DNA of 64,000 bases from Okamejei kenojei (Eukaryota): assembly GCA_035221665.1 (NCBI GenBank), contig CM069160.1:4092001-4156000 (forward strand), given 5' to 3'. The notes under the pieces were generated by a model. The model ran no database searches, was not told the origin of the DNA, and saw nothing but the letters and a program-made list of their open reading frames with translations. A program made the translations under genes and the position numbers. How positions within the stretch are numbered: the stretch's first letter is position 1; every line of letters starts with the position of its first letter. Positions 17,927 to 38,200 of this stretch are shown piece after piece.

Positions 17927-17978
17927 ATGCTTCTTTTTACCTTACTGAACACTTACGGTTTGGCCACAGTCTCCTCTG
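17927..17978 (+). CDS. MHC class I-like gene, exon 1 (leader MLLFTLLNTYGLATVSS)
   Basis: aacATG, hydrophobic signal-peptide-like 17 aa, G|gtaagc phase-1 donor, in frame with the alpha1 exon. Confidence 0.75.
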
Positions 17979-18914
17979 GTAAGCAATGCTGCTTCTACTT
18001 GTGAACTTTGAGGAAACAACAAAACTGATTCTATGTTCTGTTGCACAGTCCCTGTGATTGCCCTGGGTTCATTGTCTTGGTTGTATAAATTGAATTATTG
18101 AATTGAATGTATTAATAATTTTGGGTAAAGGTCATTCCTGAGTTGTGAAGGCTCCAGTGATAAGTTATATATACTATGGTTACCTTGGCAATCCATTGAA
18201 GAGAAGAAATGAATACAGGTAAATAATGAATATAGAACATAGGACAATACAGCACAGGAGCAGGTCGTTCAGTCCTTTACTGCGAAGAAAGGTCTTGACC
18301 CGAAACGTCACCTATTCCTTTTCTCCAGAGATGCTGCCTGACCCGCCAAGTTACTCCAGCATTGTGTGTCTACCTTCGGCCCACAATGTCTGTACTGAAC
18401 AAAATAAACTAATCTCCTCTACCTGTATGTGATCCGTATCCGGCCATTCCCTGCCTATCTATGTACCTATCTAAAAGCTTCTGAAATGTAACTGTTATAT
18501 CTGCCACCACCACCCCCCACTGGCAGCGCATTACAGGTGTCGACCACCTTCCACATAAAACAACTTGCCCCGCTCATCTCCTTTGAACATTGCTTCCCCT
18601 GCATTAAAGTGATGTTCTCTGGTCTTCAACATTTCCACCCTGGGAAAACGGTTCTGACTGTCCACTCAGTCTGTGCCTCTCACCATTTTATGCACTTTCA
18701 TCAGGTCTCCCTATCACCTCCAGTATACAAGATAAAACAATCCATGTTTGTCCAATCTGTCCTTGCACTAATTCCTCAGACAGAATTCAGGTAAACCGAT
18801 GATGTGCACTTTCAATAAAGAAGCGACTTCTTCATTAGTAGGTGTCTCACCTCTCCACGATTTCCTCAGCTGGTGTTAGACACGCAAATTATGGTAAAAC
18901 TCAGGCTGCATTAA

Positions 18915-19190
18915 ACATAGAAACATACAAACATAGAAAATAGGTGCAGGAGGAGGCCATTCGGCCCTTCGAGCCAGCACCGCCATTCAATATGATCATG
19001 GCTGATCGTCCGCTATCAGTAACCCGTGCCTGCCTTCTCCCCATATCCCTTGACTCCACCAGACCCTAGAGCGCTATCCAACTCTCTCTTAAATCCTTCC
19101 AGTGATTTGGCCTCCACTGCCCTCTGTGGCAGGGAATTCCATAAACTCACAACTCTCTGGGTAAAAAAGTTTTTTCTCAGCTCATTCTTA
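18915..19190 (-). mobile_element. CR1 LINE 3' end
   Basis: (catagaaa)n tail plus conserved 3' UTR in reverse; similar copy at 35433-35828. Confidence 0.85.
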
Positions 19191-20439
19191 AATCTTTATT
19201 CTAAGAATGAACAATCAATGTTGTTTTAATGTTGTAGTTATCTTGTTCTATTTGCTGCATGCTTCCTCTCCTGCAGACCCACTCCATTACCCCACCAACA
19301 CTTCCCCAGAAGAGGATAATGACATTTAAGACGCTTGAGGATAGGCACGTGCATATGCAGGGAATTGAGGGATATGAATCATGTACACGCATGAAGAGTT
19401 TAGTTTAACTTGACATCATGATCGGCACAGACATTGTGGCTGAACTCCAGCCCACTACACCCTTAATGAACAAAAATCTATCAATCTCAATCTGGAAATT
19501 TTCATGTGGGCAACATATTAAACAGATCACAGAATCGAGAACCAGAGGACATAGGTTTAAATTGAGGGGGGAAAGATTTAATGGGAATCTGATGGGCAAT
19601 TTCTTCCCACACAATGGTTCCGTTCTAACTATTCTGACATTCGTCAAGGCTTGGAGATTACAAACCTGTAATCGGATGCTCGTCCTCAAAGTTTAATCAC
19701 ATTGTTATCAGATGAAAGTAAATATGATGGTGATTGCCGTGTTGAAATAATACCATATAATACAAAAATCCTTGGCTATGGAGTATTTTGGGAAGTTACA
19801 TGGATTTTATCATTACTGTATTCCACGCTTAGCATTCTTATGTTTCTCCTGGTAACACTGAAACAGACATTTCTGACTCTCGCTTTGGGGCCCCTTCTCA
19901 CCTGACTTAAACACATGGACTTTGACACTGTCTGGTGTGTTGCCTGTAATCTATATCACAGAACAAATATTGCGTGTTCATGTGGAAACAAGAAACTGCA
20001 CATGCTGGTTAATACACATAACATGCTGGAGTAATTAAGCAGGTCGGGCAGTATGTCTGGAGAACATGGATAGGTGATGTTTCAGTTTAGACATCAGCTT
20101 AGATGTGCAAGAAGGAACTGCAGATGCTGCTTTAAACGAAGATAGACACAAAAAGCTGGAGTAACTCAGCGGGATAGGCTGCATCTCTGGAGAGAAGAAA
20201 TGGGTGACGTTTTGGTTCGAGACGCTTCTTCAGACTGGTGATGCAGATGCTGGTTTACACCGAAGATAGACACAAAAAACTGGAGTAACAGCTAGTCAGG
20301 CAGCAAGGCTGGAGAAAAGTAATAGGTGGCGTTTCAGGTCAAGGCACTTTTTCGGATAGAGACGGGGGTGCATATCTGTCATTAATATGTCCTATGTACC
20401 TTTTCGTATCACTTGGTTCACTGTCTCCTGATTCTCAGT

Positions 20440-20470
20440 CTGAAGAAGGGTCTCGACCCGAAACGTCACC
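20440..20470 (+). ncRNA. Minimal hammerhead-ribozyme motif in pLTR-derived repeat (best copy)
   Basis: CTGAAGA A GGGTC-TC-GACCC GAAA CGTC acc: CUGAnGA core, stem II, GAAA, palindromic ACGU, GUC cleavage triplet. Confidence 0.7.
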
Positions 20471-20900
20471 TTTTCCTTTTCTCTGGAGATGCTGCCTGAC
20501 CCACTGAGTTACTCCTGTATGCTGTGTTGAGTTTCCGTTTAGACCTTGTTTATTATAGCCGCCTCCCAGACCAAGGCATATATTGACCCCCCCCCCTGAT
20601 AATCGGGACTCACCAGCAAGATCTCCTTTACACTTACTGCTCCAATTTACAGAATCTCAGTGTCCTCATAAATCAGAATTGTCCCATTCCATGCAAACAT
20701 TTCTTACCAGATGGGCGTTTCAGTGTTGTAGCCCATAGAGATGCTATCTATGAGGACATGGACTTAATCCTGATCTCGACTACAACTTGTGTGGCATGTT
20801 TATTATTTCCCTGAAACCATGCGTGCTTCCTCTGGTTATACCAGTTTCTCCCCACATCCCAAAGAGAGGTAAATTGGCCAGCGTGAATTGATCGTTCATA

Positions 20901-23141
20901 CAGTGCCCTCCATAATGTTTCGGACAAAGAACAATCATTTATTTATTTGCCCCTGTACTGCAGAATTTGATAGTTGTCATATAAAAACTCAAATGTGGTT
21001 AAAGTGCACTTTGTCAGATTTTAAAAAAGGCCATTCTTTTTCATGTTGGTTTCACCATGTAGAAATCACAGCAGTGTTTATACATAGTCCCCCCATTTTA
21101 GGGCACCATAATGTTTGGGACACAGCAATGTCATGTAAATGAAAGTAGTCATGTTTAGTATTTTGTTGCATATCCTTTGCATGCAATGACTGCTTGAAGT
21201 CGATGATTCATGGACATCACCAGTTGCTGCGGATCTTCTCTGGTGATGCTCTGCTAGGCCTGCATTGCAACCATCTTTAGCTTATGCTTCATTTGAGGGC
21301 TAGTACCCTTCAGTTTATTCTTCAGCATATAAAAGGCATGCTCAGTTTGGTTCAGATCGGGTGATTGACTTGGCCACTCACAATTTACATTGTTTTAGCT
21401 TAGAAAAGCTCTTTTGTTGGTTTAGCAATATGTTTCGGATCATTGTCTTGCTGTAGTATGTACCGCCGGCAAATATGTGTTTTGAGGCATTTGTTTGAAA
21501 TTGTGCAGATAGGATGTGTCTATACGCTTCAGAATTCATTATGCTTCTACCATCAGTAGCTGAATGTTCAACAAAGCTAAGTAAGCCAGTATCTTCAGCA
21601 GCCATACGTGCCCAGGCCACAACCGCACTACCGTGTTTCACAGGTGAGGTGGTGTACTTGGATCTTGGGCAGTTCCTTATCTCCTCAATATTTTTGTTCT
21701 TGCCATCACTATGATATGTTAATCTTCGTCTCATCTGTCCATAAGACCTTTTTCCAGAACTGTGGTTGCTCTTTAAAGTACTTCTTGGCAAACATTAACC
21801 GGGTCATCCTATTTTAGCGGCTAAAAAGTGGTTTGCATCTTGCAGTGTAGTGTCCGTATTTCTGTTCATGAAGTCTTCTGCGGACAGTGGTCATTGACGA
21901 ATCCACACTTGACTCGTGATGAGTGTTTTCTGATCTTCGGACAGGTGTTTGGGGATGTTTCTTTTTAACAGAGAGAATTCTTCTGTCATCAGCTGTGAAG
22001 GTGTTCCTTGGCCTGCCAGTCCCTTTGCGATTAGTAAGCTCACCATAGAACCATAGAAACATAGAAAATAGGTGCAGGAGGAGGCCATTTGTCCCTTCGA
22101 GCCAGCACCGCCATTCATTGTGATCAGGCTGATCGTCTCCTATCAATAACCCGTGCCTGCCTTCTCCCCACATCCCTTGACTCCACTAGCCCCTAGAGCT
22201 CTATCTAACTCTCTCTTAAATCCATCCAGTGACTTGGCCTCCACTGCCCTCTGTGGCAGGGAATTCCATGAATTCACAACTCTCTGGATGAAAACGTTTT
22301 TTCTCACCTCAGTCTTAAAAGACCTCCCCTTTATTCTGAGACTGTGTCCCCTGGTTCTGGACTCGCCCAACATTGGGAACATGTTTCCTGCATCTAGCTT
22401 GTCCAGTCCTTTTATAATTTAATATGTTTCTATAAGATCCCCCTCATCCTTCTAAACTCCAGTCAATGCAATCCTAGTCTTTTAAATCGTTCCTCATATG
22501 ACAGTTCCGCCATCCCAGGGATCAATCCCGTGAACCTGCGCTGCACTGCCTCAATTGCAAGGATACCCTTCCTCAAATTAGGAGACCAAAACTGTACACA
22601 CTACTCCAGATGTGGTCTCACCAGAGCCCTATACAACCAGAGAGCACCAGTGCTCTCTTTCTTCTTAATGATGTTCCAATTGGTTGATTTTGGTAAGCCT
22701 AACGTTTGGCTGATGTCTTGAACAGTTTTATTCTTGTTTCTCAGACTCATAATAGCTTCTTTGACTTTAATTGGCACAATTTTGATCCTCATGTTGATAA
22801 ACAGCAATACAAGTTTCCAAAGGTGTTGGAAAGACTAGGTGCTGAGCTCTCTGATACTCTGCATTAAGGAGGCATTTAAATACCCAAGAGCAATTATATA
22901 TACCTGTGAAGCCATGTGTCCCAAACATTATGGTGCCCCGAAATGGGGGGATTATGTATAAACACAGCTGTAATTTCTACATGGTGAAACCAAAATGTGC
23001 AAGAAATACCCTTTAATAAAATCTGACAATATGCACTTTGACCACATGCGATTTTTTTTCTATTACATATCTCAAATTGTGGAGTACAGAGGCAAATAAA
23101 TAAATGATGGGTCTTTGTCCCAAACATTATGGCGGGCACTC
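20901..23141 (-). mobile_element. Tc1/mariner transposon with IR/DR-type long TIRs and decayed DDE transposase
   Basis: TA flanks (20899-20900, 23142-23143); ~220-bp TIRs starting CAGTGCCC with internal direct repeat ccataatgttt(g/c)ggaca; transposase motifs GRPR, WTDETK, QQDNDPKH, WPSQSPDLN. Confidence 0.92.
22045..22638 (-). mobile_element. CR1 LINE 3' fragment nested inside the Tc1 transposase
   Basis: catagaaa tail; LYRALVRPHLE; splits the transposase between KKESTG and ELTNRKGTGRPR. Confidence 0.9.
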
Positions 23142-24467
23142 TATGTATTAGAATCTATGGAGGGGAGGTACTAATGGGAGAATGGAAAGTATTAAATTGG
23201 TTAGCGTACCACAAGTATAAATAGGTGTTTGATGGTTACCACGGATTTGGTGGGCTAAAGGGCCTTTTTATATGCTGTACCCAGAGGCCATAAGTTTAAA
23301 ATGAGGTGAGAAAGATATAATACGAACCTGAGGCGTAGCTTTGTTACACAAAGAGTGGTGGGTGTACTGAATGAACTGCCGGAGAAGGCAGTTCAGGCAG
23401 GTAATATCGCAACATTTAAGAAACATTTAATCAGGTACATGGATAGATAGGTTTTGAATGATATGGGCCTTCTCAGAGAGCTGTGGACCCCGCGTCAATT
23501 GATGTTTTCAGGTGGAGATTGACAGATTCTTGATCACTACGGGTGTCAAGGGTTATGGTGCGAAGGCGGGACAATGTGGTTGAGAGGGAGAGATAGAGCA
23601 GCCATGATTGAATGGCCGATGGGCTGAATGGCCTATTTATTCTCCTAGGTACTTAAGTACTGATGAAATACAGGCAGTGTAGATGGGGCATGTTGGTCGG
23701 TGTGGGCAAGTTGAGCCGTAGACCCTGATTCCCTGCTGTATGACTCTTTGACTTTACCTCCCTATGATTCTATAAAGTATCTTTGACATTGTCCATGTTC
23801 TTAATAAAATAAAATATTCTTCATATTTTGGAATATTGCAACTAGTAGACCATATCGACATGATAGACAATAATAGATCTTTGAAGATGGGAATCAATCC
23901 AATCGGATCATTCAATGCTTCGACCACAATTGGTGGAATAGGTATCAGAGCCCATCTTGCCTACTCTTGAAGATGGCTCAGTGGTACAGGGGTAGAATTG
24001 CTGCCTTACCGCCCTTACAGCACCAATGCCCAGGTTGGATCCTGACTACGGGTCCTGTCTGTACGGTGTTTGTACATTATCCACCTGACCGTGTAGGTTT
24101 TTCCCGAGATCTTCAATTCTTCCCACATACCAAAGAAGTACAGGTCTGTAGGTTAATTACCTTAGTGTAGAATGTAATTTTTTTCTTGTGTGTGTAGGAT
24201 AGTGTTAGAGTGTGGGGGTTGCTGGTCAGTGTGGGCTCAGTGGGCCGAAGGTCCTGTTTCCATGCTGTATCTCTATCTAAAACCTAAATAAACGGCTCCT
24301 GACCCACAATGTCATCCGATCATCTCCCCCCCCCCCCCCCTACAGATGCTGCCTTGTCCTTGTCACCCTCTTATACAAAGTTCTTGTATTGTTAGCAGTT
24401 TTAGCAACTTCTTTGAGCACTTTACAGTGATGACACAACCATACTTATTTTTGTTTATGCATTGCAG

Positions 24468-24728
24468 ATTTTCACCATCTTGCATTTTACTACCTGTTGA
24501 ACCATGGATTGAGTGAGTTGCCTGAGTATAGTATGGTGGCAATGTTGGATGACCTCCAGATCGCATATTTTGACAGCACACTAGATCGGGCTGTTCCCAG
24601 TCAACGATGGATGGCCCAGTCTTTCCCGCAGGATCACTGGGCTTCAATGACCATCACAGTGGCAGGTTTTCATGGGATTGTCCGAGGAAATGCTGAGATA
24701 GTTTACCAACAGCAACATGGTGTCTCGA
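24468..24728 (+). CDS. MHC class I-like gene, exon 2 (alpha1 domain)
   Basis: ttgcag acceptor, A|gtaagt donor, 261 nt phase 1-1; DFHHLAFYYLLNHGLSELPEYSMVAMLDDLQIAYFDS...AVPSQRWM...DHW. Confidence 0.92.
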
Positions 24729-25483
24729 GTAAGTGTCCTGACCAGACCTGGTGTAGACACCCAACATGTACTGGAGTATTCTGATAAACTTTGTTATTTA
24801 TGTAATTATTCCCTCAGTAATAATATTTTGTTAATCCAGCATCCCCTGAATATTGGCAACAATCCTCAGAGAGTATAGCAATCCCAGACAGTGCTACAGC
24901 CTTGATGTACTTCTCATCTGCATCGCGTTAACCTTCAGCCTGAGCTGTTGGCTCTGTACCATTGCCCATCTGACAATGCACTTCTTCCTCTGTTCTTTAT
25001 GTACGACAGTGCAGAAGTCTGAGTTCTACCCTTCTGACACAGCAGAACTGCTTTCGGCCATTCTGCTCACTGAATCCACACTGATCATCAATTGTGCTAA
25101 GATGGAGTAACAGCAAACTGCAGACGCTGCCAATCTGAATTAAAAACAAACAGGAGGAACTCAGTGAGTCAGGCAGCATTCTGTGGAAAAATAGGCAGAA
25201 AACATATGAGACCAGGACCATTTAGTGATGGAGTAGGGTGGAGAAAGTTGGGGAAAAAAGTAGTGTGTGTAGGATAGTGTTAATGTGCGGGGATCACTGG
25301 TCGTTGCGGACTTGGTGGGCTGAAGGGCCTCTTTCCGCGCAGTATCTTTAAACTAAAGCTGCTCCTGTGCTGTACAGCTCTATGTTGTGTTCTGTTCTGC
25401 CTGTTTGTACCACGCTGAGAACTGATTTGTTAATTGTCTCTCCTCCCCATCCCCTTCCCCCCAACCCAAATCATCCACCTCAG

Positions 25484-25765
25484 CCCCAGCTGTTTTCTTT
25501 GTCCAGGGTTTCTGCGGCTGTGAAGTGGACAGTGACAATTCCACTGATGGGTTTGTCAGACTGGGTTATGACGGGGAGGATGCCTGTGCTTTCGACAAGG
25601 ACAGAATGCGCTGGATTGCACTAAGTCCAGATTTCCAGGTGCTAGTAGATCGGTGGAATGTCAACACCTTCATGAACAAGTATTTCAAAGATCTCCTGGA
25701 GAAGGACTGTGTGAAGTGGCTGCTGATATATCTGGAGTGTGGACAAGAAGCACTACAGAGGAGAG
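25484..25765 (+). CDS. MHC class I-like gene, exon 3 (alpha2 domain)
   Basis: cctcag acceptor (alternative in-frame AG 6 nt downstream); QGFCGCE...GYDGED..FDKDRMRW...DRWN...EKDCVKWLLIYLECGQEALQRR; G|gtata donor. Confidence 0.92.
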
Positions 25766-27005
25766 GTATACGGCGTATGCACTCTGACTGGTAGGACCAA
25801 GGGGTATCCTCTAGATAGGTCAGGTGGGAAATATCCTGCACTTCAGGCTGTCACTTGAGCAATTGTTTAGTTTAGAGATACAGTTCGGCAACAGGCCCTT
25901 TGGCCCACCGAGACCGCACCGACCAGCGATGCCGCAAACTAACACTATCCTACACATAATAGGGCCAATTTGCATTTATACCAACCTAATTAACCTACAA
26001 ATGTGTACGTCTTTCGAGTGTGAGGGGAAACCAAAGATCTCGGATAAAACCCACGCAGGTCATAGGGAGAACGTACAAACTCTGTAAAGGCAAGCACCCG
26101 TAGTTAGTAACAAGCCCGCGTCTCTGGCGCTGTAAGGCAGTAGCTCGACCGCTTCGCCACTCTGTTCTTGGACGAGGTTATCAGTAAAGTCTGGCAACAT
26201 GACTCTTAGATGGATCCAGTGGGTTGGAAGTGCAAGTGAAAGATAAATATTGAACCAGTGTCCTCTATTCACAGTCACGTAGATATTCGGGAAATGGAGG
26301 GATATGTATCTTGGCCTTATGTTCAGCACCGACCTTGTGGCCTGAAGGGTCTGTTGCTGTGCTGATCAGAAACCGAATCAGATTCTCCATTTTCCTCTAT
26401 TACTCCTTAGGATGGTGACATCCAATTTCCAACAGTTCTGTGGTTGAAGAAATTCTTCCTCCCATTCCCTCTTGGAATATGTTATTATTCTTTCACAATA
26501 TATTATTATTGTGTTATTATTATTCAGCAGAGATTCATGAACAAGTAGAAGCAATCTTGTATACAGTATCAATCCCAATGGTGAGTTATACTCCTCCATT
26601 GGGCACTGCATTCCCCTTCCGCCTGCGCTGTCAGCTAAAGTCAGCAGCCAAGATAAAGAGCATGTCATTGATATGAAAACGAAATGTTTTGTTGTTTTGT
26701 TAGAAATGCAAAAAGAAAAGAGAAAAGGCTGGAAACTTTGTGCAAGATAGAACTGCAGATGATGGTTTACACCGAAGATAGAAGATGTTGGAGTAACTCA
26801 GTGGGTGAGGTAGCATCTCTGGGCATTCCTTCTCTCCAGACATGCTGCCTCATCTGCTGAGTTACTCCAGCATTCTGTGTCTGGGCTGGAAACTTTGTTC
26901 AGCTAGAGAAAAACTCTGATTGGGAAAGAGGTGAGTTGGAGTGATCTTACAATTCAAGGCTTTTCTTCATGTCTTCACTAATTCTGACGCTTCTTCTACT
27001 TGCAG

Positions 27006-27278
27006 AAACCCCTGAGGTGTTTATTGGGATTAAACGTGATGGGTCGCAATCACTGAGACTCTCCTGCCTTGTCACAGGTTTCTACCCACCGACCATCGAT
27101 GTAACGTGGCTGAAGGATGGTGAGGGGGTCCCCGGGTCTGAATCCAGTGATCTGTTGCCTAATTGGGATGGGACTTACCAGCTGAAGAATACAATTCAGC
27201 TGAGTGGAGAAGATGTGGCAACATTCTCCTGCTACATCGAACATGCAACTCTGCTGCAGGGAGTCAATGTTCCACAGG
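27006..27278 (+). CDS. MHC class I-like gene, exon 4 (alpha3, C1-set Ig domain)
   Basis: LSCLVTGFYPPTIDVTWLKDG...LPNWDGTYQ...FSCYIEH; ttgcag acceptor and G|gtaagt donor. Confidence 0.95.
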
Positions 27279-27490
27279 GTAAGTGGCAAGTCAATGAATC
27301 TGATCACTTGAGACCAGACACCTCCTGGACTGACATAACAGCGTCAACTCACACTCTTATCTAATCTGTGGATTTAGACTTTCCACTTTAGAGATATGGT
27401 GCAGGAACAGGCTCTTCAGCTCACTGAGTCCTTGCCGAACAGAGATCATCCCGTACATTTACACTATCCAACGCACTGGGACAATTTACA

Positions 27491-30400
27491 ATTTTACTTC
27501 GGAGTCACGTGAGTCGGGCCGACAGGTAAGCTTTACCGTGGCCGTGTGTCCTTTTTCTCTGTGGTCTGCTTGTTTTCCAGAAAGAATGAGCAAGACCAGA
27601 GGAAAGAAGTCTGCAGCTCGCCCCCGTTCGTCCTCCGTTGAGGAATGCTCTTTGGAGGGGGGCAAGAGGCGGCGGGTATAACTACCGTGCCGAGCCCAGC
27701 ACCGCTAGTGCTGCCTGAGCAGTGGGCTGGAGGTACCTGCAGCCAGAACCGGGCGGTAGTGTCCGACGATTCGGATGAAGATGCCTCACCGCTCAAGAGC
27801 GGCACAGGCAGCCGCCTAAGCCGCATGGAACGCTTATGGAGCAATTACTCCAGCGAGATCTGCTGAGAGAGCAGCAGCAGACTCGCCAAGGGAGCTCAGG
27901 CACTCCCGCAGTGCCTTTTACGGCACTGGCCATTGCTTCACCTTCTTTTGAAGGCAGCATTGGCGACCAGGTCTGGGCTGCTCAAGAAGAGGGGTCACTG
28001 GCTGAAGATATCGGGAGTACGCAGTGGTGTACAGGAACAGGAAAAGCTGCTGGGTGTGGTCAAACCGCTACGTGGCCATTCCACAAGCGGGTCGGCCATT
28101 AGAGCCGAAACTTGCAGCCAGCATTAACCACCTGTCCTCTAAACTCCTACAAGAACAGGTGGTCAATGAGGCTCTTCAACTATATACAGCCCCAGTAAAT
28201 TGTACATCTTTGAATGTACCTGCTGTCAATAGCCAAATTTGGGGACATTTGGGGCAGAACATCAGAAACCTGGAGTTGAAGCTCCAGAAGATCCTTAAAC
28301 TCCTGACTGCAGGAATAACATCTTATGCTCGGTCCATTGATGGTGCGGACATCTCCACAAATCAGCAAGACACATTAGCTCTGCTGTGCACCACTCAATA
28401 TGAAATAAATAATTTGCGAAAGGAGATTATCAAGCCTTGCCCTCAACCCTAAGTTTGCGGGACTTTGCAAAAACACCGGGGTCAGAACCTCCTATTCTGC
28501 TCTTTGGGAAAGACCTTCCCAAAAAAGGTGAAAGACCTGGAAGAAGAATCCAAGACCTTTGGTCTCGTGAGGGCAGGTTTGGGACCGAGCAGAACCCAAC
28601 AAACCCAGGCGGCAGTACCCCATGGCGTCCACCAGTCGTCGACCACACTATGGGACTGGTGAAAGCTCGGCGTCCGCAACCATTCCCCGTAAGCCTTTTT
28701 TAGGCCAGGGCCCAGAGCGGACCCCATGGAAAATGCGCCACCCCCCCAACAACATCGAGATCAACATCAACCCTCTACAGCCCAGCAGACGCCTCATCGC
28801 CCAGCGAAGAGGCAGAAGAAGCAACCAATAACCATGGAGGTAGGTGGCTCTGGTTCCTCTCAGCATATGTGCAGTAGGGGCTCTGTACTAACAGGGGGGA
28901 GATTGCACTTGTTTTGGATGCATGGGAATCCATCACTAATGACAAGTATATACTCAGCAGCGTTCATGGCTACAAAATTGACTTTGTCCATAAAAATTTT
29001 CCACCAGTTCAGCATATGCCCAAAAGGGTATTCACCCTCTCAGTCAAGGAGAAACAAGAGGGTCAAGCTGAACTGATGAGGTTACAAGCTAAAGGTGTCA
29101 TTGAAAGAACAAAACATGAACCTTTGGAATATTGGTCTAATATTTTCACTAAAATCAAAAAAGATGGTGGACGACGCATCATCATTGACTTAACTACTTT
29201 GAACAAGTCTGTCAGGTATATACATTTCAACCTGGATACTTTTGAAACAGCCAGACTATTGGTTTCTAGAGGTACTTTCTAGCAAGCATTGATTTAAAAG
29301 ATGACTACTACTCAGTACCCATACACAAGGAGCATCGAAAATATTTAAAATTTATCTGGATGAAACAGCTATGGCAATATAAAGCCTTAGCAAATGGGCT
29401 AACCTCTGCTCCAAGGTTGTTCACTAAAATCTTAAAAACCTGCCTTGGCATTATTGAGGAAACAAAAGCATATAGTCATGGCGTATTTAGACGACATTTT
29501 AATAGTAGGGAAAACCTTGGAGACAGCCATTCTGGCAGTAGCAGCCACCAAACGTTTGTTTGAAACTTTGGGGTTTGTCATACATCCAGATAAATCCAAT
29601 CTTACACCATCCACTGCCATGGACTATCTTGGATTTACTATAGATACTGTTCGCATGATTGTACTCTGCGAAGGGGAAAAGCATCAGAATTGGCGCTATC
29701 ATGCAACGAACTCATGAATAAAACATCAGCCAACCATACGGGAAGTAGCTAGAGTTATTGGCAAAATGAAGCAGCTTTTTCCAGCCGTACAATTTGGGCC
29801 TTTGCACTATCAAAATTTGCAAAGAGCTAAAGTGCATGCACTAAAGCAAAACTCAGGTCACTTTGACCGAGCTATGAGTTTAACTGCTGAATCCATTCCA
29901 GAGTTACAATGGTGGGCAAGGAACGTAAGACTCAGCTCCAGTCCCATAATGATCACCAACCCAATATTAACCATTCAAACGGATGCCAGTGCTTTGGGCT
30001 GGGGAGCAACTAACATGCAATCCAGCACAGGGGGGCAGATGGAATAAAATTTGAATCATCTTGCCTACAGACATGGGGTATCAACTATTTAGAAATGTTG
30101 CGTGCGTTTTATGGGTTAAAAGCATATTCATCTAATACGCATCATGCACATGTCCGGTTGCAACTAGATAATACCACGGTGGTGGCTTATATCAATCACA
30201 TGGATGTGTAAAGTCGATATCGTGTGACAATTTGGCCAACCTAATCTGGCAATGGTGTGTTAAAAGGCATATTTGGTTATCAGCAACTTACCTTACCAGG
30301 TAAGCAAAATACAGTGGCAGACACCAGGTCACGTAGATTTAATGATAACATCGAATGGATGTTAAATCCCAAAGTATTTGCTGAAATTACAAAGCAATAT

Positions 30401-32250
30401 GGCACACCAGATATCGATCTATTTGCATCCAGGCTGAATCACCAGGTACCAACGTATGTCGCTTGGGAACCAGACCCTGAGGCAGCAGCAGTTGATGCAT
30501 TCTCGCTGCATTGGGGGAAAATGTTCTTTTATGCTTTTCCTCCCTTCTGCCTCATCAGTCGGGTATTACGCAAGATTCAATTGGATTCCGCTTCAGGAAT
30601 CTTGATAATACCTGACTGGCCTACACAGCTATGGTTCCCAGTGGCTTTCGACATGCCTGTTGAGACACCGTTGGAATTCCCCAGCAGTCGACAGTTATTA
30701 ATCCACCCAGTGTCAGGCATTAGTCACCCGTGCCATGACAGAGTCAATCTCCTGGCTTGCAGATTCTAAAAAGACCTCTACTGGGCCTGGACTGTCTGAG
30801 GACGCCATCAACATGATGACCGCATCTCACCGGGAGTCCACCAGGAGACAATACCTGGCCAATATAAGAAAATGGGAACGGTATTGCTCCAAAACAGGAA
30901 CTACCTACACTACAGCTACAGCCACCAGTGTTGTGGAGTTTCTGGTTGGATTACATCGGGAAGGACTCAGCTACAGCGCCATTAATACAGCCAGGAGTGC
31001 GTTGTCAGCTTATTTGGTTCCAGCAGCAGGACAACTGACTTTGGGGTCCCATCCACTAGTGGTCAAAATCATGAGGGGCATTTTTAACACCAATTCCCCT
31101 AGGCCTAGGTACACTCAGATCTGGGATGTCAGCATAGTACTGACGTACCTTAGGGGATGGCCACCACCCAGGTCACTTACTCTGGAACAACTTACACTGA
31201 AATCAGTCATGCTCATGGCTCTAGTGTCAGCTCAAAGGGTACAGTCCCTCCACCTTCTGAGGCTGGACAGCATGACAGAGTCATTGGACTGTATCACATT
31301 TCACATTCAGGGACTGGTCAAAACAAACTAGACCAGGTACCACCCTCCAGTTATGGAGTTCCGGGCATATTCACCTGACCCACGGTTGTGTGCCAAGACC
31401 CATCTCGCCAACTACATAGACACAAAATATAACTTAAGAGGGAGAGAAAAAGCCTTATGGATAAGCCACAAGAAGCCTCATGGTCAGGTGACGAGCCAAA
31501 CCATTTCAAGGTGGCTCAAGCAGGTGCATAAGTCCGCGGGAGTCGATACTAATGTGTACAAATCTCATTCCACCAGGGCTGCATCTACGTCGGCGGCTAG
31601 GCGAATGGTGTGCCTATGGGCCATATTCTGGCCAGAGCAGGATGGTCCTCGGAAAGAACTTTCCAAAGGTTTTATAATAAGCCGCTGGCGGAGCCTGCTA
31701 CATTTGCAGACAGAATTTTAGAGTCTGCAGATAATATTTAATTTAAGCCCGGGGGAGCTCTCTGTTTTTTGTTGTTATTAATAAACCTTTTTTGTTCACA
31801 AACAGGTTATTGTTGATTGTATAACATGCTTCCTCCCTCTAAGGTCTTCAGGCAGTGAGTGAAGCATGAGCTGGTACACGGTTCGGATTCAACAGAGCTT
31901 TGAAGTCTTCACGTAGTCACTCACGTGACTCCGAATTAAAATAGTAAGATTAAATGAGAACTTACCAGTTCGAAGTTTGATCTGTATTTTATGAGGAGTT
32001 ACGATGAGGGATTACGTGCCCTCCGCTCCCACCCTCTATTATACAGATCAACTGGTAATTAAGTTCTTATTTTTTCTTTACTATATTTATTTCAATTGTT
32101 GTGTTTTTCTGTGAATCCACACCGCTGCTTTGAAGAAATGTCGCGCATGCGTGCTGGACGGGGTCTTCACGTAATCCCTCATCGTAACTCCTCATAAAAT
32201 ACAGATCAAACTTCGAACTGGTAAGTTCTCATTTAATCTTACTATTTTAC
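27491..32250 (+). mobile_element. Near-complete DIRS1-like retrotransposon (gag, RT/RNase H, MT-like, tyrosine recombinase, ICR, right terminus)
   Basis: gag-like from ATG 27586; RT YLDD (29445 ORF); QTDAS; DLFAS/YAFPPF; YR with SAQR and HSTR; ICR 31919-32018 complementary to both termini; ATTTTAC at both ends. Confidence 0.95.
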
Positions 32251-33132
32251 CTAAGCCAATTAACCTTTAAAGCCCGTATTTCTTTGGAATGTGGGAGGAA
32301 ACGGGAAACTCCCAGACAAAACTCACGCAGTCACTGGGAGAAACTAATTTTATGATAGTAGCTAGTTACACAAAAGGCTAGTAGTGATGCCATAACCGAC
32401 CCCATTATCCGTCTGAAGTAGCAGCACCTGTTCTGTAGCTGACTTATTTGTTCCAGCCAAGACCTCTGCAAAGATCACAAGATTAAGAGTTCAAGAGAGT
32501 TTATTGTTATGTTGTCAGATAGGACAATGAAATTCTTCCTTTGCTTCAGCACAAGAGAATATGGTAGGCATGAATATAGAACATATCAGTGTGTCTATAT
32601 ACCATTATATAAATTTATATACACATGAATAAATAATAGATAAAGTGCAACTAAAAAGAAAATGGGCTATTAATGTTCAGAGTTTTGTTTGAGTTGCGTT
32701 TAATAGCCTGATGGCTGTGGTGAAGAGGCTGTTTCTGAACCTTGACGTTGCAGTCTTCAGGCTCCTGTACCTTCTCCCTAAAGGTAGCAGGGAGATGAGT
32801 GTGTGGCCAGGATGATGTGGGTCCTTGGTGATGCTGACAGCCTTTTTGAGGCAGCGACTGCGATAGATCCCTCGATGGTAGGGAGGTCAGAGCCGATGAG
32901 GGACTGGGCAGTATTTAGTACTTTTTGTAGCATTTTTCGCTCCTGGGCACTCAAGTTGCTGAACCAAGCCACGATGCAACCGATCAGCATGCTCTCTATT
33001 GTGCACCTGTAGAAGTTAGAGAGAAGTTAGAGTCAGCTTGGCCCTTCACACCAGGGCGAAGCTGACATGGTTACAATTGCTGGTCAGTACGAATAGGCAG
33101 TAATGTTAATGTCTGAGTGTGCGCTCATGTGG

Positions 33133-33304
33133 NNNNNNNNNNNNNNNNNNNNNNNNNNNNNNNNNNNNNNNNNNNNNNNNNNNNNNNNNNNNNNNNNNNN
33201 NNNNNNNNNNNNNNNNNNNNNNNNNNNNNNNNNNNNNNNNNNNNNNNNNNNNNNNNNNNNNNNNNNNNNNNNNNNNNNNNNNNNNNNNNNNNNNNNNNNN
33301 NNNN
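33133..33304. other. Assembly gap (N run) within MHC intron 4
   Basis: Run of N. Confidence 0.99.
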
Positions 33305-33680
33305 CTCCGATACCATTGAACCATCAGCAGTTTAAAACCTTTGAAGTGTTATCAACTATAAATGGGTTAACTTTTATTTGTTATAATAACAATTGTCAAC
33401 ATAAGAAAATAGCCTTGTTGACCTCTACACTGCAAATAGTCATCTATTTATGACGTACATGATTGTTTAAATTCTTAATTAAATGCTGGAGATAAAATCA
33501 CAAAGCCACAATGCTAATATGAATTTTAAAGATTTTCATCGATTTTTTTAAACACATCTATCGTCTGGACAATTACATAAATCTAAAATATGAACAGTGC
33601 TAGTTTAATGTAGATAATAAAATAATTACAAAGTTGTTATTGATCAATAAATGTTTAAATTGCACTATATATGACTACAG

Positions 33681-33922
33681 AGAGGGCAGCGAAAGAAGAT
33701 ATAAAGATTAGGATCGTGACTGGAGCTGTAATCATTCCTCTTATTCTCGTTGGGATCATCATTGGAATTGTTTGCTGGATGAAGAGGAAAAGGAGAAAAA
33801 CTCTCAATGAACAGGGACCAGCTGACAACAGCAGAGACCAGGAGAGGACTGCATTGACCATGAAGCACAATCAGCTTCCTTTGGGATGCAGAGGAGGTCT
33901 ACCGGAACGATGCATGGATTAG
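33681..33922 (+). CDS. MHC class I-like gene, exon 5 (connecting peptide, TM, cytoplasmic tail)
   Basis: ctacag acceptor in phase 1 with exon 4; IVTGAVIIPLILVGIIIGIVCW followed by KRKRRK stop-transfer; AATAAA at 34483. Confidence 0.85.
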
Positions 33923-34619
33923 TGGGGTATTGGTGACAGGGAGAAGTTGGACAGACTTGGATTGTTTTCTCTGGAATGTCGGGGATTGAGGGGAGACCTG
34001 TCAGTAATATATAAAACTGTGAGGGGTAGAGATAGGGCAGACCATCAGACTTTTTACCCTGGAAGGAAATACCAAATAAGAGCAGGTATAGCTTTACAAT
34101 GAGTGCCAAAGTTTAAAAAAAGATGTGCAGGGCAAGTGTTTTACGCCAAGGGTGATGAGTGACTGGAATGTGCTGCCGGGGGTGGTGGTGAAAGCAGATA
34201 TGGTAGTGGCATTAAATAGACTTTTACATAGGCGCATGAATGTGCAAGGAATGGATGGATATGGATTATGTGCAAGGAGATAAGAATTGATCTTGGCATC
34301 ATGTTCAGCACAATCATTGTGGATCAAAGAGCCTGTTCTTGTGCTGTACTGTTCTATGTTCTATGCTCTTGATTCTATCAATGCTGACTGATGGCTTTAC
34401 ATTCAGCCATTCATTTTTTTAAGTGCTGTCTTAGTTGCAGTTACCCGGTGATTCCGAACTCATTCATTGCACCACATTTTGGAATAAAAGGTCGCCCATT
34501 TGATTGATTGATTGATTAATACTTTATTGTCACGTGCGTCAAGTCACAGTGAAATTATTCGTTTTGCAAAACATGCACAAGGTATCTAAAGTTACAAAGT
34601 AATCATTACAGTCCCCAAT

Positions 34620-35230
34620 GGTCCGTCTTTGTTCTCCGCAGCCCCTCCATGTTGGGTTCACCTGTGTTGTAAGCGCCCCCCTCCCAACCCCGGGCCCCTC
34701 TTTGTTGTCGGCAGCCGCTCCATGTTGGGTTTCTGTGTTAACCATGCCCTCTCAACCCGGGACCCTCTTTGTTCTCAGCAGCCCCTCCATGTTGGGTTCA
34801 CTTGTGTTATCGGCGCCCCTCCCCCAACCCCGGGTCGCTCTTTTGTACTCGGCAGCCCTTCCATGTTGGGTTCACCTGTGTTCTCAGCGCCCACCCCCCC
34901 CCCCCCAAAGCCCGGGACCCTCTTTGTTCTCGGCAGCCCCTCCATGTTGGGTTCACCTGTGTTATCGGCGCACCCCCCCCCCCCCCCAACCCCGGGACCC
35001 TCTTCATTCTGGACAGCTCCTCCATGTTGGGTTCTCCTGTGTTATCGGCGCCCCCGCCCCAACCCCGGGACCGTCTTTATTCTAGGCAGCTCCTGCATGT
35101 TGGGTTCACCTGTGTTCTCAGCGCCCCCCTCCCCCAAACACGGGACCCTCTTTGTTATCGGCAGCCCCTCCATGTTGGGTTCACCTGTGTTATCGGCGGC
35201 CCCCAACCCTGGGACCCTCTTTGTTCTCTT
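34620..35230. repeat. Minisatellite, ~70-bp unit, ~9 copies
   Basis: Unit ~ggcagcccctccatgttgggttcacctgtgttatcggcg(c)n aaccccgggaccctctttgttct. Confidence 0.9.
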
Positions 35231-38200
35231 CGTTTTCGGTAGACCTCTCATGTCGGGTCCCTTTTTAAAATAGATACGAAGAAGATTTATTTTTCAGGAG
35301 GTGTATGATTTGCCTGAACTTTCTATTGCAGCTGTGAAGACAAGGTGAATGACTATTTTCCAGGTTGAGATATTTGAGTTTTTAGATCAGAAATGTATCA
35401 AAGATTGCAAGTATTATGCGGTAAACTGATCAAATAGAAACACAGAAACACAGAAAATAGGTGCAGGAGTAGGCCATTCGGCCCTTCGAGCCTGCACCGC
35501 CATTCAATATGATCATGGCTGATCATCCTACTCAGTATCCCGTACCTGCCTTCGCTCCATACCCCCTGATCCCTTTAGCCACAAGGGCCACATCTAACTA
35601 CCTCTTAAATATAGCCAATGAACTGGCCTCGATTACCTTCTGTGGCAGAGAATTCCAGAGATTCACCACTCTCTGTGTGAAAAATGTTTTTCTCATCTCG
35701 GTCCTAAAAGACTTCCCCCTTATCCTTAAACTGTGACCCCTTGTCCTGGACATCCGCAACATCGGGAACAATCTTTCCTGCATCTAGCCTGTCCAACCCC
35801 TTAAGAATTTTGTAAGTATCTATAAGATTGGACATTGCAGTTATTGAATGATGCAGTCTGTTCAAGGGAGATTATAACTGATTACTAATCTTATTTTACA
35901 TAAAATATTAAGAAGTACATCTCAGGAAGAGGCCCTTTGGCCCACAATGTCTGTGGTGAACATGGTGAGATGCTGAACTTATCTCATCCAACTGCAACAT
36001 GATCCACATCCCCTTACTTCCTGCAGATCAAATTGTCAATCTAAAAGCCTCTCACATGTCATATACTTATCTTGCCGGAGATAGACATGAAAAGCTGGGG
36101 AGCTCACCGGATCAGACAGCATCTCTGGATACAAGGCATAGGTGACATTTCGGGTCGAGACCCTTCTTCAGACTGAGAACTGCTGTTTGACCCGCGTTTT
36201 GAGCCTATCTTCGGGTTACTCCAGCTTTTTGAGCCTATCTTCGGGTGAAACCAGCATCTGCAGTTCCTTCCTAGTTATTTTGCCACTTCTCTTTGTCACA
36301 TACTGTAACCTGCATTCCGTGTTCACATACCTGATGGTGTAGTGGAGAAGTAATTGCCTTTGCATGTAATGCTTCACTCAGTGCTTCAAGTATTTGATGG
36401 GCCAGTCAACAAGGATCTTTGTTTTCAATACGAACCACACTCTACACCACAGTTTAGATAATATTGCTTAGTTTAGTTGAGAAACCTTTGAGATGTGCAA
36501 GGAAACTGGAGCACCTGGAGAAATGCCACGTGGTCACATGGAGAACATGCAAATTCCACAGAAACAATATCCCAGTACCCTGCCATGTGAACACGGTAAG
36601 TATGGGGCCTGTGTTTTATTGACCCTACAGAGCACGGGGAACAATACTCATTATCAAAACTGTGGTATAATAGCTGTGTAAGTGTTTTATGTGCAACAGA
36701 CCGAGAATTTCATTGTATATCCACCAGTGTCATTTCTGAATTATGAGCGTTTAAAAAATACGTTTGATTGAGTTTGCAGGCATCCACCATTCTCTGGGTA
36801 ACATTGAAATAAGCATGTTCAGCCATTCTGAGAATAGGAGCGAATTGGCTCAGAGTGATAACAGAGCAAAATTATTAGTTTAGTTTAGTTTAGAGATAAA
36901 GGTTGGAACAAACCCTTCAGCCCACCGAGTCCTCACTGATTTCCGCAAACTAACATTGGTCCAGATGAAACCCGGCTGTGTGGCACTTAAGGCAGCAACT
37001 GCAGTGCTGCACCGCCATGTTGCCCTTATTGTTGTCGGGTGTGCAGCGAATGGAGGTATATTATGTGCAGGCTAATAAGAGTTGGTCTTGACATCATGTT
37101 CAACACAGACATTGTGGGCCAAAGGGCCTGTTCCAGTGCTGTGGAGGGGACCAGGGGACAGGGGAGGGACAATTTCTTGGCGGCCGCGCGCATGCGCACA
37201 ATCACACACACACGCCAGGCATCTGTAGCTTCAGCCGTGCTCGCTGTGAACGGTATTAGCTTGGGATTCTTCCAGTTTCCAGCCCCGCGACGTGGATGCT
37301 TCTACGACTGGGCCGGTACCGTTGGAATGCGTCAATAAGTGCAGATTTGTACCACAGATTTAAAAAAATACCGGGCATTATGCTGGACAACATAATATAG
37401 GACAGGACACTTTCAAGCTGCTTGAAAGTGCCATGAAGAAGGGTTTCGGACCGAAACGTCGCCTATTTCCTTCGCTCCATAGATGCTGCCGCACCCGCAG
37501 AGTTCCTCCAGCATTTTTGTCTACCTTCGATTTTCTAACATGTGCAGTTCCTTCTTGAACATGTCCTATATTATGTTGCCCAGCATGACGTCCAGTGTTT
37601 TTTTTAAATCTGTGGTAACTGTAGTATGGATACCGAGCTATTAAACCAAGAAATATATAAATGAACTGAATTATATGCAATCTAAAACTTTGTATTCTTG
37701 GATGTATTAAACATTTTTACCCCAATTGCCAGCTGTAAAAATAGATGGTGTCAATTAGTTAATAAAATTGCTTTCTAATCTGCAGAGAGCATTTGGTCTC
37801 TGTAATTGCTTGTTTTGTTGCCTTTGTAACTGTCATGCACGAAATTTTGTTTAAACTTGTTTGAATAAAAATAAAGGAAATTCGATTCAATTCAATGTAC
37901 AGGTGGAGGTTCCCTCTCTCTATTTGTCAAATGTATTTTAGATTCTCATGTGGCTCATGGGATACGGTTTATTGGTGAAACATTTAGCTTGTGCGTTTGC
38001 CAACATGTGGATAGCTCATCACTGAAGATTACGTCAATTATTGTCCTCTGGCAGTTTAGACACTACTTTGGAATTGGGCTTGGTGTTCTTGCTTGAGCGC
38101 TTATCCTGATGATATAGCACAATCACTATGTGTATTAATGGTAAATCATAATTGATATTAGCTCAATGTTACTGAGCATGTTCTCAAACCAGGAGACGTC

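What the first reader, a model, noticed from the sequence alone, without database searches (positions are those of the whole stretch)
17927..33922. Intact non-classical MHC class I-like gene with a hydrophobic, non-peptide-type groove (possible lipid or small-ligand presenter)
Seen: five phase-1 exons splice into a stop-free 369-aa heavy chain. By eye alignment to classical class I numbering, several peptide-anchoring residues are replaced: Y59 by H (DHW), Y123 by A (GEDACAF), T143 by L and Y159 by L (KDLLEKDC). W147 and Y171 are kept, and the N86 glycan site is absent. The helices and floor are hydrophobic (MTITVAGFHGIV, FFVQGF, FMNKYF). Established: such substitutions mark non-classical class I, and CD1 uses a hydrophobic groove for lipids. 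Inference: this is a chondrichthyan non-classical lineage, possibly CD1-like in function; I cannot assign it to a named lineage without a tree.
Basis: partly seen in the sequence, partly recalled or inferred. Interest (0 to 1): 0.8.

Follow-up and report, generated by a model that had tools for sequence, protein, structure and literature searches.

The report
Skate nonclassical MHC-I, greasy groove
This is an intact, transcribed skate gene for an MHC class I-like protein whose binding groove is almost entirely greasy and has barely changed since sharks and rays split. It belongs to a distinct sister lineage of the shark "UGA" molecule reported to carry lipids, so it probably presents a hydrophobic non-peptide ligand.

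Summary
The assembly gap lies inside intron 4 and no coding segment is missing.

Contigs from a public run begin exactly at the exon-2 acceptor and end exactly at the exon-4 donor, so the gene is spliced and expressed.

Aligned with classical class I, only W147 and Y171 of the eight peptide-termini anchors are kept. F7 and R146 are conservative. H59, Q84, L143 and L159 are replacements.

At 44 groove-equivalent positions the protein has 33 hydrophobic and 2 charged residues. That is more hydrophobic than UGA, UFA-like or classical sequences.

One ortholog per species occurs in 12 sharks and rays (57-89% identity), auto-named "MR1-like" by NCBI. They form a 100/100 clade that mirrors the species tree.

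The clade is sister to UGA (PDB 9CH4) and distinct from UFA (8GM8), classical class I and CD1. It lacks MR1's ligand lysine and any tyrosine sorting tail.

Best reading: a conserved presenter of hydrophobic, lipid-like ligands, which is inferred and not shown. I found no published name for the lineage.

The scan had already found UGA copies elsewhere in this genome; this gene is a different lineage.

The parts
17927..17978 (+). Exon 1: ATG and 17-aa leader (MLLFTLLNTYGLATVSS), phase-1 donor GT at 17979
   Evidence: The leader is conserved with the shark orthologs P0144 and P0146 (MLLVTLLNVYCVP.VSS).
24468..24728 (+). Exon 2: alpha1 domain (261 nt)
   Evidence: RNA-type contig X1 record 1 aligns from exactly 24468, with 21 unaligned letters before it.
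25490..25765 (+). Exon 3: alpha2 domain (276 nt). It holds the invariant CGC motif, the NST sequon and the nearly invariant helix NKYFK.LLEKDCVKWL.
   Evidence: No RNA contig covers it.
27006..27278 (+). Exon 4: alpha3 C1-set Ig domain (273 nt)
   Evidence: X1 record 8 aligns 27005-27278 with 0 mismatches, ends exactly at the donor, and runs on for 38 letters that do not match the intron.
27279..33680 (+). Intron 4 (6.4 kb). It holds a DIRS-type retroelement (about 27491-32250, ORFs on the + strand) and the assembly gap 33133-33304.
   Evidence: earlier finding s1-880302.
33681..33922 (+). Exon 5: connecting peptide, transmembrane helix, basic stop-transfer stretch, 47-aa tail without tyrosine, then TAG
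   Evidence: It is colinear with the C-termini of the orthologs, including NCBI's Leucoraja model P0001.

Best explanation
The locus is an intact, spliced and transcribed gene for a membrane-anchored nonclassical MHC class I heavy chain. It is the skate ortholog of a single- or low-copy lineage that all sampled sharks and rays have kept since they diverged. That lineage lies in the MHC class Ib cluster and is the sister of the UGA lineage.

Inferred mechanism:
- The chain pairs with beta-2-microglobulin.
- Its alpha1/alpha2 groove has lost the polar network that clamps peptide ends and is lined almost wholly by aliphatic and aromatic side chains.
- The groove holds a conserved hydrophobic non-peptide ligand, such as a lipid, a lipopeptide acyl chain or a similar molecule.
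- The complex is displayed at the cell surface to a conserved receptor, probably a T-cell receptor of limited diversity.
- The tail has no tyrosine or dileucine signal. Loading would therefore occur in the secretory or surface-recycling route, as for CD1a, and not in late endosomes.

Shown here: gene structure, splicing at two exon boundaries, fold family, loss of anchors, groove composition, orthology and conservation.

Inferred only: beta-2-microglobulin pairing, the ligand, the receptor and the trafficking route.
For: Gene and expression:
- The gene model is intact.
- Contigs stop or start exactly at predicted exon boundaries and do not cover unique intron sequence.

Fold:
- Pfam finds MHC_I and C1-set.
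- The AlphaFold model of the 89%-identical Leucoraja ortholog has pLDDT above 90 over alpha1/alpha2.
- Its best structural match is shark UGA 9CH4, Z 27.0, rmsd 2.0 A, 267 residues aligned.

Anchors: the signature F7 H59 Q84 C99 A123 L143 R146 W147 L159 Y171 is invariant in 13 species. Classical sequences have Y Y R Y F T K W Y Y.

Groove composition:
- 33-34 of 44 groove-equivalent positions are hydrophobic and 2 are charged; mean Kyte-Doolittle +1.0 to +1.36.
- UGA scores 0.0 to +0.57 with 5-7 charged.
- Classical sequences score -0.5 to +0.17 with 5-9 charged.

Conservation:
- 57% of groove positions are invariant, against 39% of other alpha1/alpha2 positions and 29% of alpha3.
- Ray-shark identity is 0.74 in alpha2 and 0.57 in alpha3.
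- Exposed residues of the alpha2 helix are also invariant.

Orthology and kinship:
- There is one hit per species.
- The clade has 100/100 support and a species-tree topology; it is sister to UGA at 95/94 and 91/87.
- UGA and UFA are reported to bind lipids (PMC12562908).

Synteny: the sawfish ortholog LOC127585976 is marked MHC-Ib and sits beside TRIM39-like and GPR139 genes. The window also has a GPR139-like ORF and a TRIM ORF.
Against: - No ligand, cavity volume or beta-2-microglobulin pairing was measured. I could not read model coordinates, so bulky residues (F70, F152, Y155, F156, W167 equivalents) might fill the groove and leave no pocket.
- The AlphaFold model superposes as well on peptide-binding chicken BF2 (rmsd 2.0-2.2 A) as on UGA, and less well on CD1 and MR1 (about 3 A).
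- By sequence, CD1 chains score below classical class I.
- The lipid claim for the sister lineage rests on a personal communication in a review.
- The groove positions were mapped from classical numbering by conserved landmarks and by eye. They were not mapped from a solved structure of this lineage.
- RNA evidence is thin: depth is about 4, exon 3 is not covered, and the run's RNA status is a guess.
- The alpha1 contig differs at 6 of 231 bases from the window while alpha3 differs at 0 of 274. That could mean alpha1 polymorphism or a second copy.
Confidence: 0.6

Rival explanations
1. The groove is closed. The molecule presents nothing and works as a ligand or receptor in its own right, like HFE, FcRn or the NKG2D ligands. 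Its conserved surface would be read directly by an NK-type or other receptor.
For: - Many bulky aromatic residues sit at groove-facing positions.
- Exposed helix residues are as conserved as buried ones.
- HFE, ZAG and FcRn are among the structural matches at Z 24-25.
Against: - Small residues occupy floor and wall positions where classical molecules have large ones: G97, C99, A123, A26, A34, G69 and G76 equivalents. That pattern suggests space and not filling.
- Groove positions are more conserved than the rest of alpha1/alpha2.
- The sister UGA is reported to carry ligands.
Confidence: 0.2
2. It binds a narrow set of very hydrophobic or lipid-modified peptides. Chicken YF1*7.1 and Mamu-B*098 do this with N-myristoylated peptides, using a classical-type groove geometry.
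For: - The model superposes at 2.0 A on YF1*7.1 entries holding N-myristoylated and N-palmitoylated ligands (9EB3, 9EB4).
- W147, Y171, R146 and F7 are retained or conservative, so part of the termini-binding frame survives.
Against: Four of eight termini anchors are replaced by residues that cannot make the usual hydrogen bonds (H59, Q84, L143, L159). Structural Z values within 1 are ties, so the YF1 match is not specific.
Confidence: 0.15
3. [quoted passage not shown]
For: After UGA, MR1 chains are the best PDB sequence matches: alpha2 exon 1.2e-16 and lineage profile 193 bits.
Against: - MR1's lead over frog and fish classical chains is only about 5 bits (193 against 188 and 185).
- In the printed alignment of the Hemiscyllium ortholog with MR1, the column of the residue I recall as MR1 Lys43 holds a non-basic residue. 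It is Ala in the window and varies across the lineage.
- The MR1 positions that I recall as basic pocket residues (Arg9 and Arg94, numbering from memory) are Tyr and Gln here.
- No tree with MR1 could be built, because no MR1 sequence was available by id.
Confidence: 0.05

Closest known systems
Shark/ray UGA nonclassical MHC class I (PDB 9CH4, 'Crystal structure of shark nonclassical MHC CLASS I, UGA')
   Same: - Sister clade in the tree (95/94 and 91/87).
- Best sequence match (277 bits with the lineage profile) and best structure match (Z 27.0).
- Shares A123, L159 and a hydrophobic residue at 143.
- Found in both sharks and rays, MHC-linked and low in copy number.
- UGA copies lie 578 and 708 kb further along this same genome.
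   Different: - Only 36-39% identical, and each lineage is its own 100% clade.
- UGA keeps Y7 and Y59 and has F, not C, at position 99.
- UGA's groove-equivalent positions carry 5-7 charged residues against 2 here.
- UGA has a YQNI tail (P0231); this lineage has no tyrosine in the tail.
Shark UFA nonclassical MHC class I (PDB 8GM8)
   Same: An elasmobranch MHC-Ib gene placed in the same class Ib cluster and described as CD1-like (PMC10751288). It has the same fold (Z 21.7).
   Different: It is 32% identical and scores below classical chains with the lineage profile (162 bits). UFA-like sequences (P0016, P0049) form a separate long branch. UFA has lost W133, W147 and Y171, which this lineage keeps.
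CD1 (lipid-presenting class I-like family of amniotes)
   Same: It works alike in principle: a beta-2-microglobulin-type class I fold with a hydrophobic groove that lacks peptide anchors. Like CD1a, this lineage has no tyrosine sorting motif.
   Different: There is no specific sequence kinship. CD1 chains do not reach the top 60 of the profile search, and the one CD1b in the tree is a long branch elsewhere. The model superposes on chicken CD1-1 at 3.0 A against 2.0 A for UGA.
MR1
   Same: Both show very high alpha1/alpha2 conservation across a large clade and sharing of the DHW motif at positions 58-60. MR1 is the best non-shark PDB sequence match.
   Different: This lineage has no lysine at the column of MR1's Schiff-base lysine and none of what I recall as MR1's basic pocket residues. 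The margin over classical chains is about 5 bits. The NCBI name is a best-hit label and not evidence of orthology.
Classical class I (UAA) of cartilaginous fish (PDB 6LUP)
   Same: Same exon-domain plan, both disulfide cysteine pairs, W133, W147, W167 and Y171.
   Different: About 32% identical. Six of eight termini anchors are changed, the N86 sequon is lost, and the gene falls outside the classical clade.

Membership tests
MHC class I heavy chain (fold and gene plan) | Leader / alpha1 / alpha2 / alpha3 / TM exons separated by phase-1 introns | tested here: met
   five exons, all GT-AG, all phase 1; the alpha2 exon has the canonical 276 nt.
MHC class I heavy chain (fold and gene plan) | MHC_I alpha1/alpha2 domain plus C1-set alpha3 domain, with the cysteine pairs 101-164 and 203-259 | tested here: met
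   Pfam; cysteines at model positions 115/178 and 217/272. The AlphaFold model of the ortholog matches class I chains at Z 25-27.
MHC class I heavy chain (fold and gene plan) | Association with beta-2-microglobulin | not testable with these tools
   No complex was modelled; this needs co-expression.
Classical class I (UAA) | Conserved peptide-termini anchors Y7, Y59, R/Y84, T143, K146, W147, Y159, Y171 | tested here: not met
   the window has F H Q L R W L Y. Two are identical, two conservative and four replaced. The pattern is invariant across 13 species.
Classical class I (UAA) | Groups with classical sequences in a tree | tested here: not met
   a separate 100/100 clade, sister to UGA.
Classical class I (UAA) | High allelic polymorphism in the groove | tested here: inconclusive
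   one transcript contig differs at 6 of 231 bases in alpha1 and 0 of 274 in alpha3. The positions were not listed, and this is a single sample.
UGA lineage | Falls inside the clade of 9CH4-like sequences at ortholog-level identity | tested here: not met
   The orectolobiform ortholog P0149 matches 9CH4 only distantly. The Leucoraja ortholog's model is 39% identical to 9CH4. UGA-type skate proteins (P0229, P0231) form the sister clade.
UGA lineage | Tyrosine-based YQNI cytoplasmic tail | tested here: not met
   One search shows YQNI in P0231. Searches show no tyrosine in the tail of this gene or its orthologs.
UFA lineage | Ortholog-level similarity to 8GM8 | tested here: not met
   32% identity, 162 bits (below classical chains), and a separate branch.
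UDA lineage | Eight of nine invariant peptide-termini residues retained. This is recalled from the abstract of Almeida et al., J Immunol 2020; the paper is not held. | tested here: inconclusive
   This lineage keeps only two of eight, which argues against UDA. However, the defining feature comes from my memory and no UDA reference sequence was at hand.
CD1 | Specific sequence kinship with CD1 chains | tested here: not met
   no CD1 chain among the 60 best PDB matches. CD1b is placed elsewhere on a long branch.
CD1 | Hydrophobic groove without peptide anchors | tested here: met
   by composition at 44 groove-equivalent positions mapped by landmarks. Cavity shape was not measured.
CD1 | Binds lipids | not testable with these tools
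   Needs ligand elution or a structure.
MR1 | Groove lysine (K43) that forms a Schiff base with the ligand | tested here: not met
   One search aligns the column of the residue I recall as MR1 Lys43 with a non-basic residue in the Hemiscyllium ortholog. It is Ala in the window and varies across the lineage.

The most novel reading that the evidence does not exclude
The invariant unpaired cysteine at the position-99 equivalent is a reactive groove residue. It sits in the CGC motif on the groove floor, next to the canonical Cys101. It would capture its ligand covalently by a disulfide or thioether, a thiol counterpart of MR1's Schiff-base lysine. Under this reading the lineage would be a third chemical mode of antigen capture by class I-like molecules, alongside peptide clamping and lipid burial.
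Probability: 0.08. Interest if true: 0.85.

Novelty: new variant of a known kind. Interest (0 to 1): 0.5.

Why it matters
Lipid presentation was long thought to begin with CD1 in amniotes. Shark UFA and UGA have recently pushed a CD1-like function back to the oldest jawed vertebrates.

This gene shows that sharks and rays also keep a separate lineage with several distinctive features:
- It has the most hydrophobic groove of those compared.
- Its groove is more strongly conserved than the rest of the molecule.
- It carries no endosomal sorting signal.
- It has an invariant groove cysteine.

If it binds ligand, elasmobranchs would have at least three specialised hydrophobic-ligand presenters with different trafficking, as mammals have CD1a-d. 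That would make the origin of non-peptide antigen presentation, and of any matching invariant T cells, testable in a skate.

Caveat: the specialists who described UFA and UGA have probably seen this lineage. The sawfish ortholog is marked MHC-Ib in their 2023 tables. I simply found no name or description in what I could read.

Tried and rejected
- Literature searches for the PDB codes 9CH4 and 8GM8 found nothing relevant. The entry titles came from fold search instead.
- The primary UDA and UEA papers (PMC7002201, PMC8454915) are not held, and no primary UFA/UGA paper is held. The lineage's published name, if any, could not be checked.
I therefore made no comparison with the Leucoraja locus, computed no dN/dS, and could not check whether the DIRS insertion is specific to this genome.
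Exons were searched one by one by reference. The 89%-identical Leucoraja protein P0001 stood in for folding. The joined model was built only inside local scripts from window.fa, for counting, alignment and trees.
Only one CD1b-like protein (P0225) was included, and it is a long branch.
- Orthology of the elephant-shark trio (P0173, P0182, P0188) was tested and left open: AU p = 0.40 with this lineage and p = 0.49 with this lineage plus UGA.
- Rejected: membership of UGA, UFA, the classical lineage, CD1 or MR1 (see the membership tests).
- Rejected: the acceptor at 25505-06, which gives a stop.
- Rejected: a hidden exon in the assembly gap, because the orthologs are colinear.
- Other class I exons in the window: none were found.
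Full report
**Gene model and the assembly gap.** I read the five proposed exons and spliced them in a local script from window.fa.
- The exons are 17927-17978, 24468-24728, 25490-25765, 27006-27278 and 33681-33922.
- Every intron is GT-AG and phase 1. The coding sequence is 1104 nt, giving 367 aa with no internal stop.
- The alpha2 exon has the canonical 276 nt.
- Exon 3 must use the acceptor at 25488-89. The AG at 25505-06 gives an immediate stop.
- The gap at 33133-33304 lies in intron 4, 376 nt before exon 5. No reading frame crosses it.
- The junction VNVPQ | ERAAKED is colinear with 12 orthologs with no residues missing. No exon is hidden in the gap.
- Physical continuity of the DNA across the gap cannot be proven. 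I did not fill it.

**How the searches were done.** Exons were searched one by one by reference. The joined model was used only in local scripts.

**Domains.** Pfam gives MHC_I for alpha2 (4.7e-16) and weakly for alpha1 (5.6e-5). It gives C1-set for alpha3 (8.5e-16). No other class I exon lies in the window.

**Expression.** One public run, guessed to be RNA, holds two informative contigs.
- One aligns from exactly 24468, the exon-2 acceptor, with 21 unaligned letters before it.
- The other covers 27005-27278 with no mismatch, stops exactly at the exon-4 donor, and continues for 38 letters that do not match the intron.
- That run covers no unique intron sequence. This is the signature of a spliced transcript.
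- Depth is low and exon 3 is not covered.
- The alpha1 contig differs from the window at 6 of 231 bases and the alpha3 contig at 0 of 274. I could not see which bases differ, so polymorphism or a second copy stays open.
- A second run is DNA of a related species, about 3% divergent, and covers introns too.

**Relatives.** A full-library search with the alpha1 exon found only one cluster above 50% identity. It is P0001, Leucoraja erinacea XP_055486430.1, with 92% identity in alpha1.
- Searching with P0001 found one protein per species in Pristis, Mobula, Hypanus, Pristiophorus, Heptranchias, Scyliorhinus, Stegostoma, Hemiscyllium, Mustelus, Cetorhinus and Chiloscyllium.
- Identity to P0001 is 54-72%. 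[quoted passage not shown]
- The next hits drop to 33-36%.
- Against the window's protein, identities are 89% for Leucoraja and 57-71% for the rest.
- The window therefore comes from a skate.
- Leucoraja also has a second, partial copy on another contig (P0155). "Low copy" is safer than "single copy".

**Tree.** I used IQ-TREE with LG+C20 on 270 columns of alpha1 to alpha3.
- These sequences plus the window form a 100/100 clade.
- Its inner topology follows the species tree: skates, sawfish and stingrays against squalomorph and galeomorph sharks. This is what orthologs kept since the shark-ray split would show.
- The clade is sister to a second clade (95/94, and 91/87 in the second tree) that holds Amblyraja, Leucoraja and Pristiophorus proteins.

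**Naming the neighbouring lineages.** Structure-search titles settled the names. I folded P0001 with a 70-sequence alignment (pLDDT 82 overall and above 90 in alpha1/alpha2).
- Its best match is 9CH4, "shark nonclassical MHC class I, UGA" (Z 27.0, rmsd 2.0 A, 39% identity).
- 8GM8 is "shark nonclassical MHC class I, UFA" (Z 21.7, 32% identity).
- The orectolobiform ortholog P0149 is only distantly similar to 9CH4. The 9CH4-like skate and sawshark proteins form the sister clade. The sister clade is therefore UGA, and this lineage is not.
- UFA-like sequences (P0016, P0049) are a separate long branch.

**What is published about UFA and UGA.**
- Verissimo et al. 2023 mention UFA as CD1-like, from unpublished data (PMC10751288).
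- A 2025 review reports, as a personal communication, that UFA and UGA bind lipids like CD1d (PMC12562908).
- I found no name for the present lineage.
- From my memory of the 2020 abstract, UDA keeps eight of nine peptide anchors. That would exclude UDA here. The paper is not held, so this is only a lead.

**Holocephalans.** The three elephant-shark genes could not be placed. AU tests do not reject them as sister to this lineage or to this lineage plus UGA.

**Anchor residues.** In a MAFFT alignment of 118 class I-type sequences:
- Classical sequences read Y7 Y59 W60 R84 N86 Y99 C101 F123 W133 T143 K146 W147 Y159 C164 W167 Y171.
- The window and all 12 orthologs read F H W Q [H/R/S/Q/G] C C A W L R W L C W Y.
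- Three orectolobiform sharks have L in place of W147.
- The only sequon is NST in the alpha2 loop.

**Groove composition and conservation.** I mapped 44 groove-facing positions of classical class I to the window by conserved landmarks. The mapping was by eye and not from a structure of this lineage.
- This lineage has 33-34 hydrophobic and 2 charged residues, with mean Kyte-Doolittle +1.0 to +1.36.
- UGA scores 0.0 to +0.57 with 5-7 charged residues.
- Classical sequences score -0.5 to +0.17 with 5-9 charged residues.
- Small residues sit at positions 26, 34, 69, 76, 97, 99 and 123.
- Differences among orthologs are swaps among I, V, L, M and F.
- Of the groove positions, 57% are invariant across 13 species. 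The figure is 39% for the rest of alpha1/alpha2 and 29% for alpha3.
- Ray-shark identity is 0.65, 0.74, 0.57 and 0.41 for alpha1, alpha2, alpha3 and the TM/tail.
- The helix segment NKYFK.LLEKDCVKWL is nearly invariant, including its exposed charged residues. This suggests a conserved receptor as well as a conserved ligand.

**CD1 and MR1.** A profile of the lineage against PDB ranks as follows:

| PDB target | Bits |
|---|---|
| UGA (9CH4) | 277 |
| MR1 | 193 |
| Frog classical chain | 188 |
| Fish classical chain | 185 |
| Shark UAA | 175 |
| UFA (8GM8) | 162 |
| CD1 chains | not among the best 60 |

- The "MR1-like" label is a best-hit name with a margin of about 5 bits.
- The column of what I recall as MR1's Schiff-base lysine holds Ala in the window and varies in the lineage.
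- By sequence this is not CD1. The likeness is in groove chemistry only.
- The tail has no tyrosine and no dileucine motif in any ortholog.

**Genomic context.**
- The window holds a 293-aa GPR139-like receptor ORF at 42761-43642 (-) and a TRIM RING/B-box ORF at 61961-62551 (+).
- In the sawfish MHC table, the ortholog LOC127585976 is marked MHC-Ib. It follows a GPR139 cluster and TRIM39-like genes, between B2M/BRD2 and COL11A2/RXRB.
- Earlier notes of this scan place UGA copies 578 and 708 kb beyond this window, and another nonclassical gene 235 kb before it.

**Reading.**
- Best reading (0.6): a conserved, membrane-anchored, nonclassical class I molecule that holds a hydrophobic non-peptide ligand and shows it to a conserved receptor. 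It would load outside late endosomes.
- Rival (0.2): a closed groove with a direct receptor-ligand role.
- Rival (0.15): acylated or very hydrophobic peptides, as in YF1*7.1.
- Rival (0.05): an MR1-type metabolite binder.
- The ligand, beta-2-microglobulin pairing, receptor and trafficking are all inferred.

**Limits.**
- Model coordinates could not be read, so no cavity was measured.

**Verdict.** The gene belongs to a distinct lineage beside UGA. It is annotated automatically in many species but, as far as I could read, it has not been described.

Noticed in passing
window 25510-25521 (alpha2 exon, FCGC) and the same column in P0001 and P0142-P0152: A CGC motif is invariant in all 13 species. 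The first cysteine sits at the position-99 equivalent on the groove floor and has no conserved partner. Batoids add a further cysteine at the 124 equivalent, and most species have one in YLECG.
   Followed up: partly
window 42761-43642 (-): A single-exon 293-aa rhodopsin-type receptor ORF (7tm_1, 1.9e-20). [quoted passage not shown] GPR139 genes form a cluster beside the ortholog in the sawfish MHC-Ib region.
   Followed up: partly
window 61961-62551 (+): An ORF with a RING finger and a B-box (TRIM-type first exon). TRIM39-like genes flank the sawfish ortholog.
   Followed up: no
window 27491-32250 (+), intron 4: A DIRS-type retroelement with long ORFs lies in the same orientation as the gene. 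Splicing from exon 4 still occurs.
   Followed up: no
window 24468-24698: A transcript-type contig of run X1 differs at 6 of 231 bases in alpha1, while the alpha3 contig of the same run is identical over 274 bases. This could be an allele or a paralog; the positions were not listed.
   Followed up: no
window 34618-35273 (+): Three overlapping long ORFs come from a proline-rich repeat (…PPCWVHLC…, …PSMLGSPVLSAP…) just downstream of the gene. It looks like a tandem or interspersed repeat, not a gene.
   Followed up: no
window 1953-2870 (-), 3864-4712 (+), 50878-51483 (+): Reverse-transcriptase ORF fragments of retroelements. A second assembly gap lies at 2953-3341.
   Followed up: no
P0155 (Leucoraja erinacea, a contig other than that of P0001): A second, partial copy of this lineage in the little skate. 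It holds half of alpha2 and all of alpha3 at about 90% identity, behind an unrelated N-terminus. It may be a pseudogene, a haplotig or a mis-model.
   Followed up: partly
P0144 (Pristiophorus japonicus ortholog), cytoplasmic tail: The tail is extended by several repeats of a Q-Q-R-L/P-A-E-T-x-R-D-like unit. Shorter versions of the motif (QGPAE.S.D) are shared by the other orthologs.
   Followed up: no
P0226-P0230 (Leucoraja erinacea): NCBI isoforms 'uncharacterized protein LOC129716032' fuse a UGA-type class I gene with the neighbouring GPR139 gene. This pulled a GPCR into a class I protein cluster and is probably a read-through mis-model.
   Followed up: no
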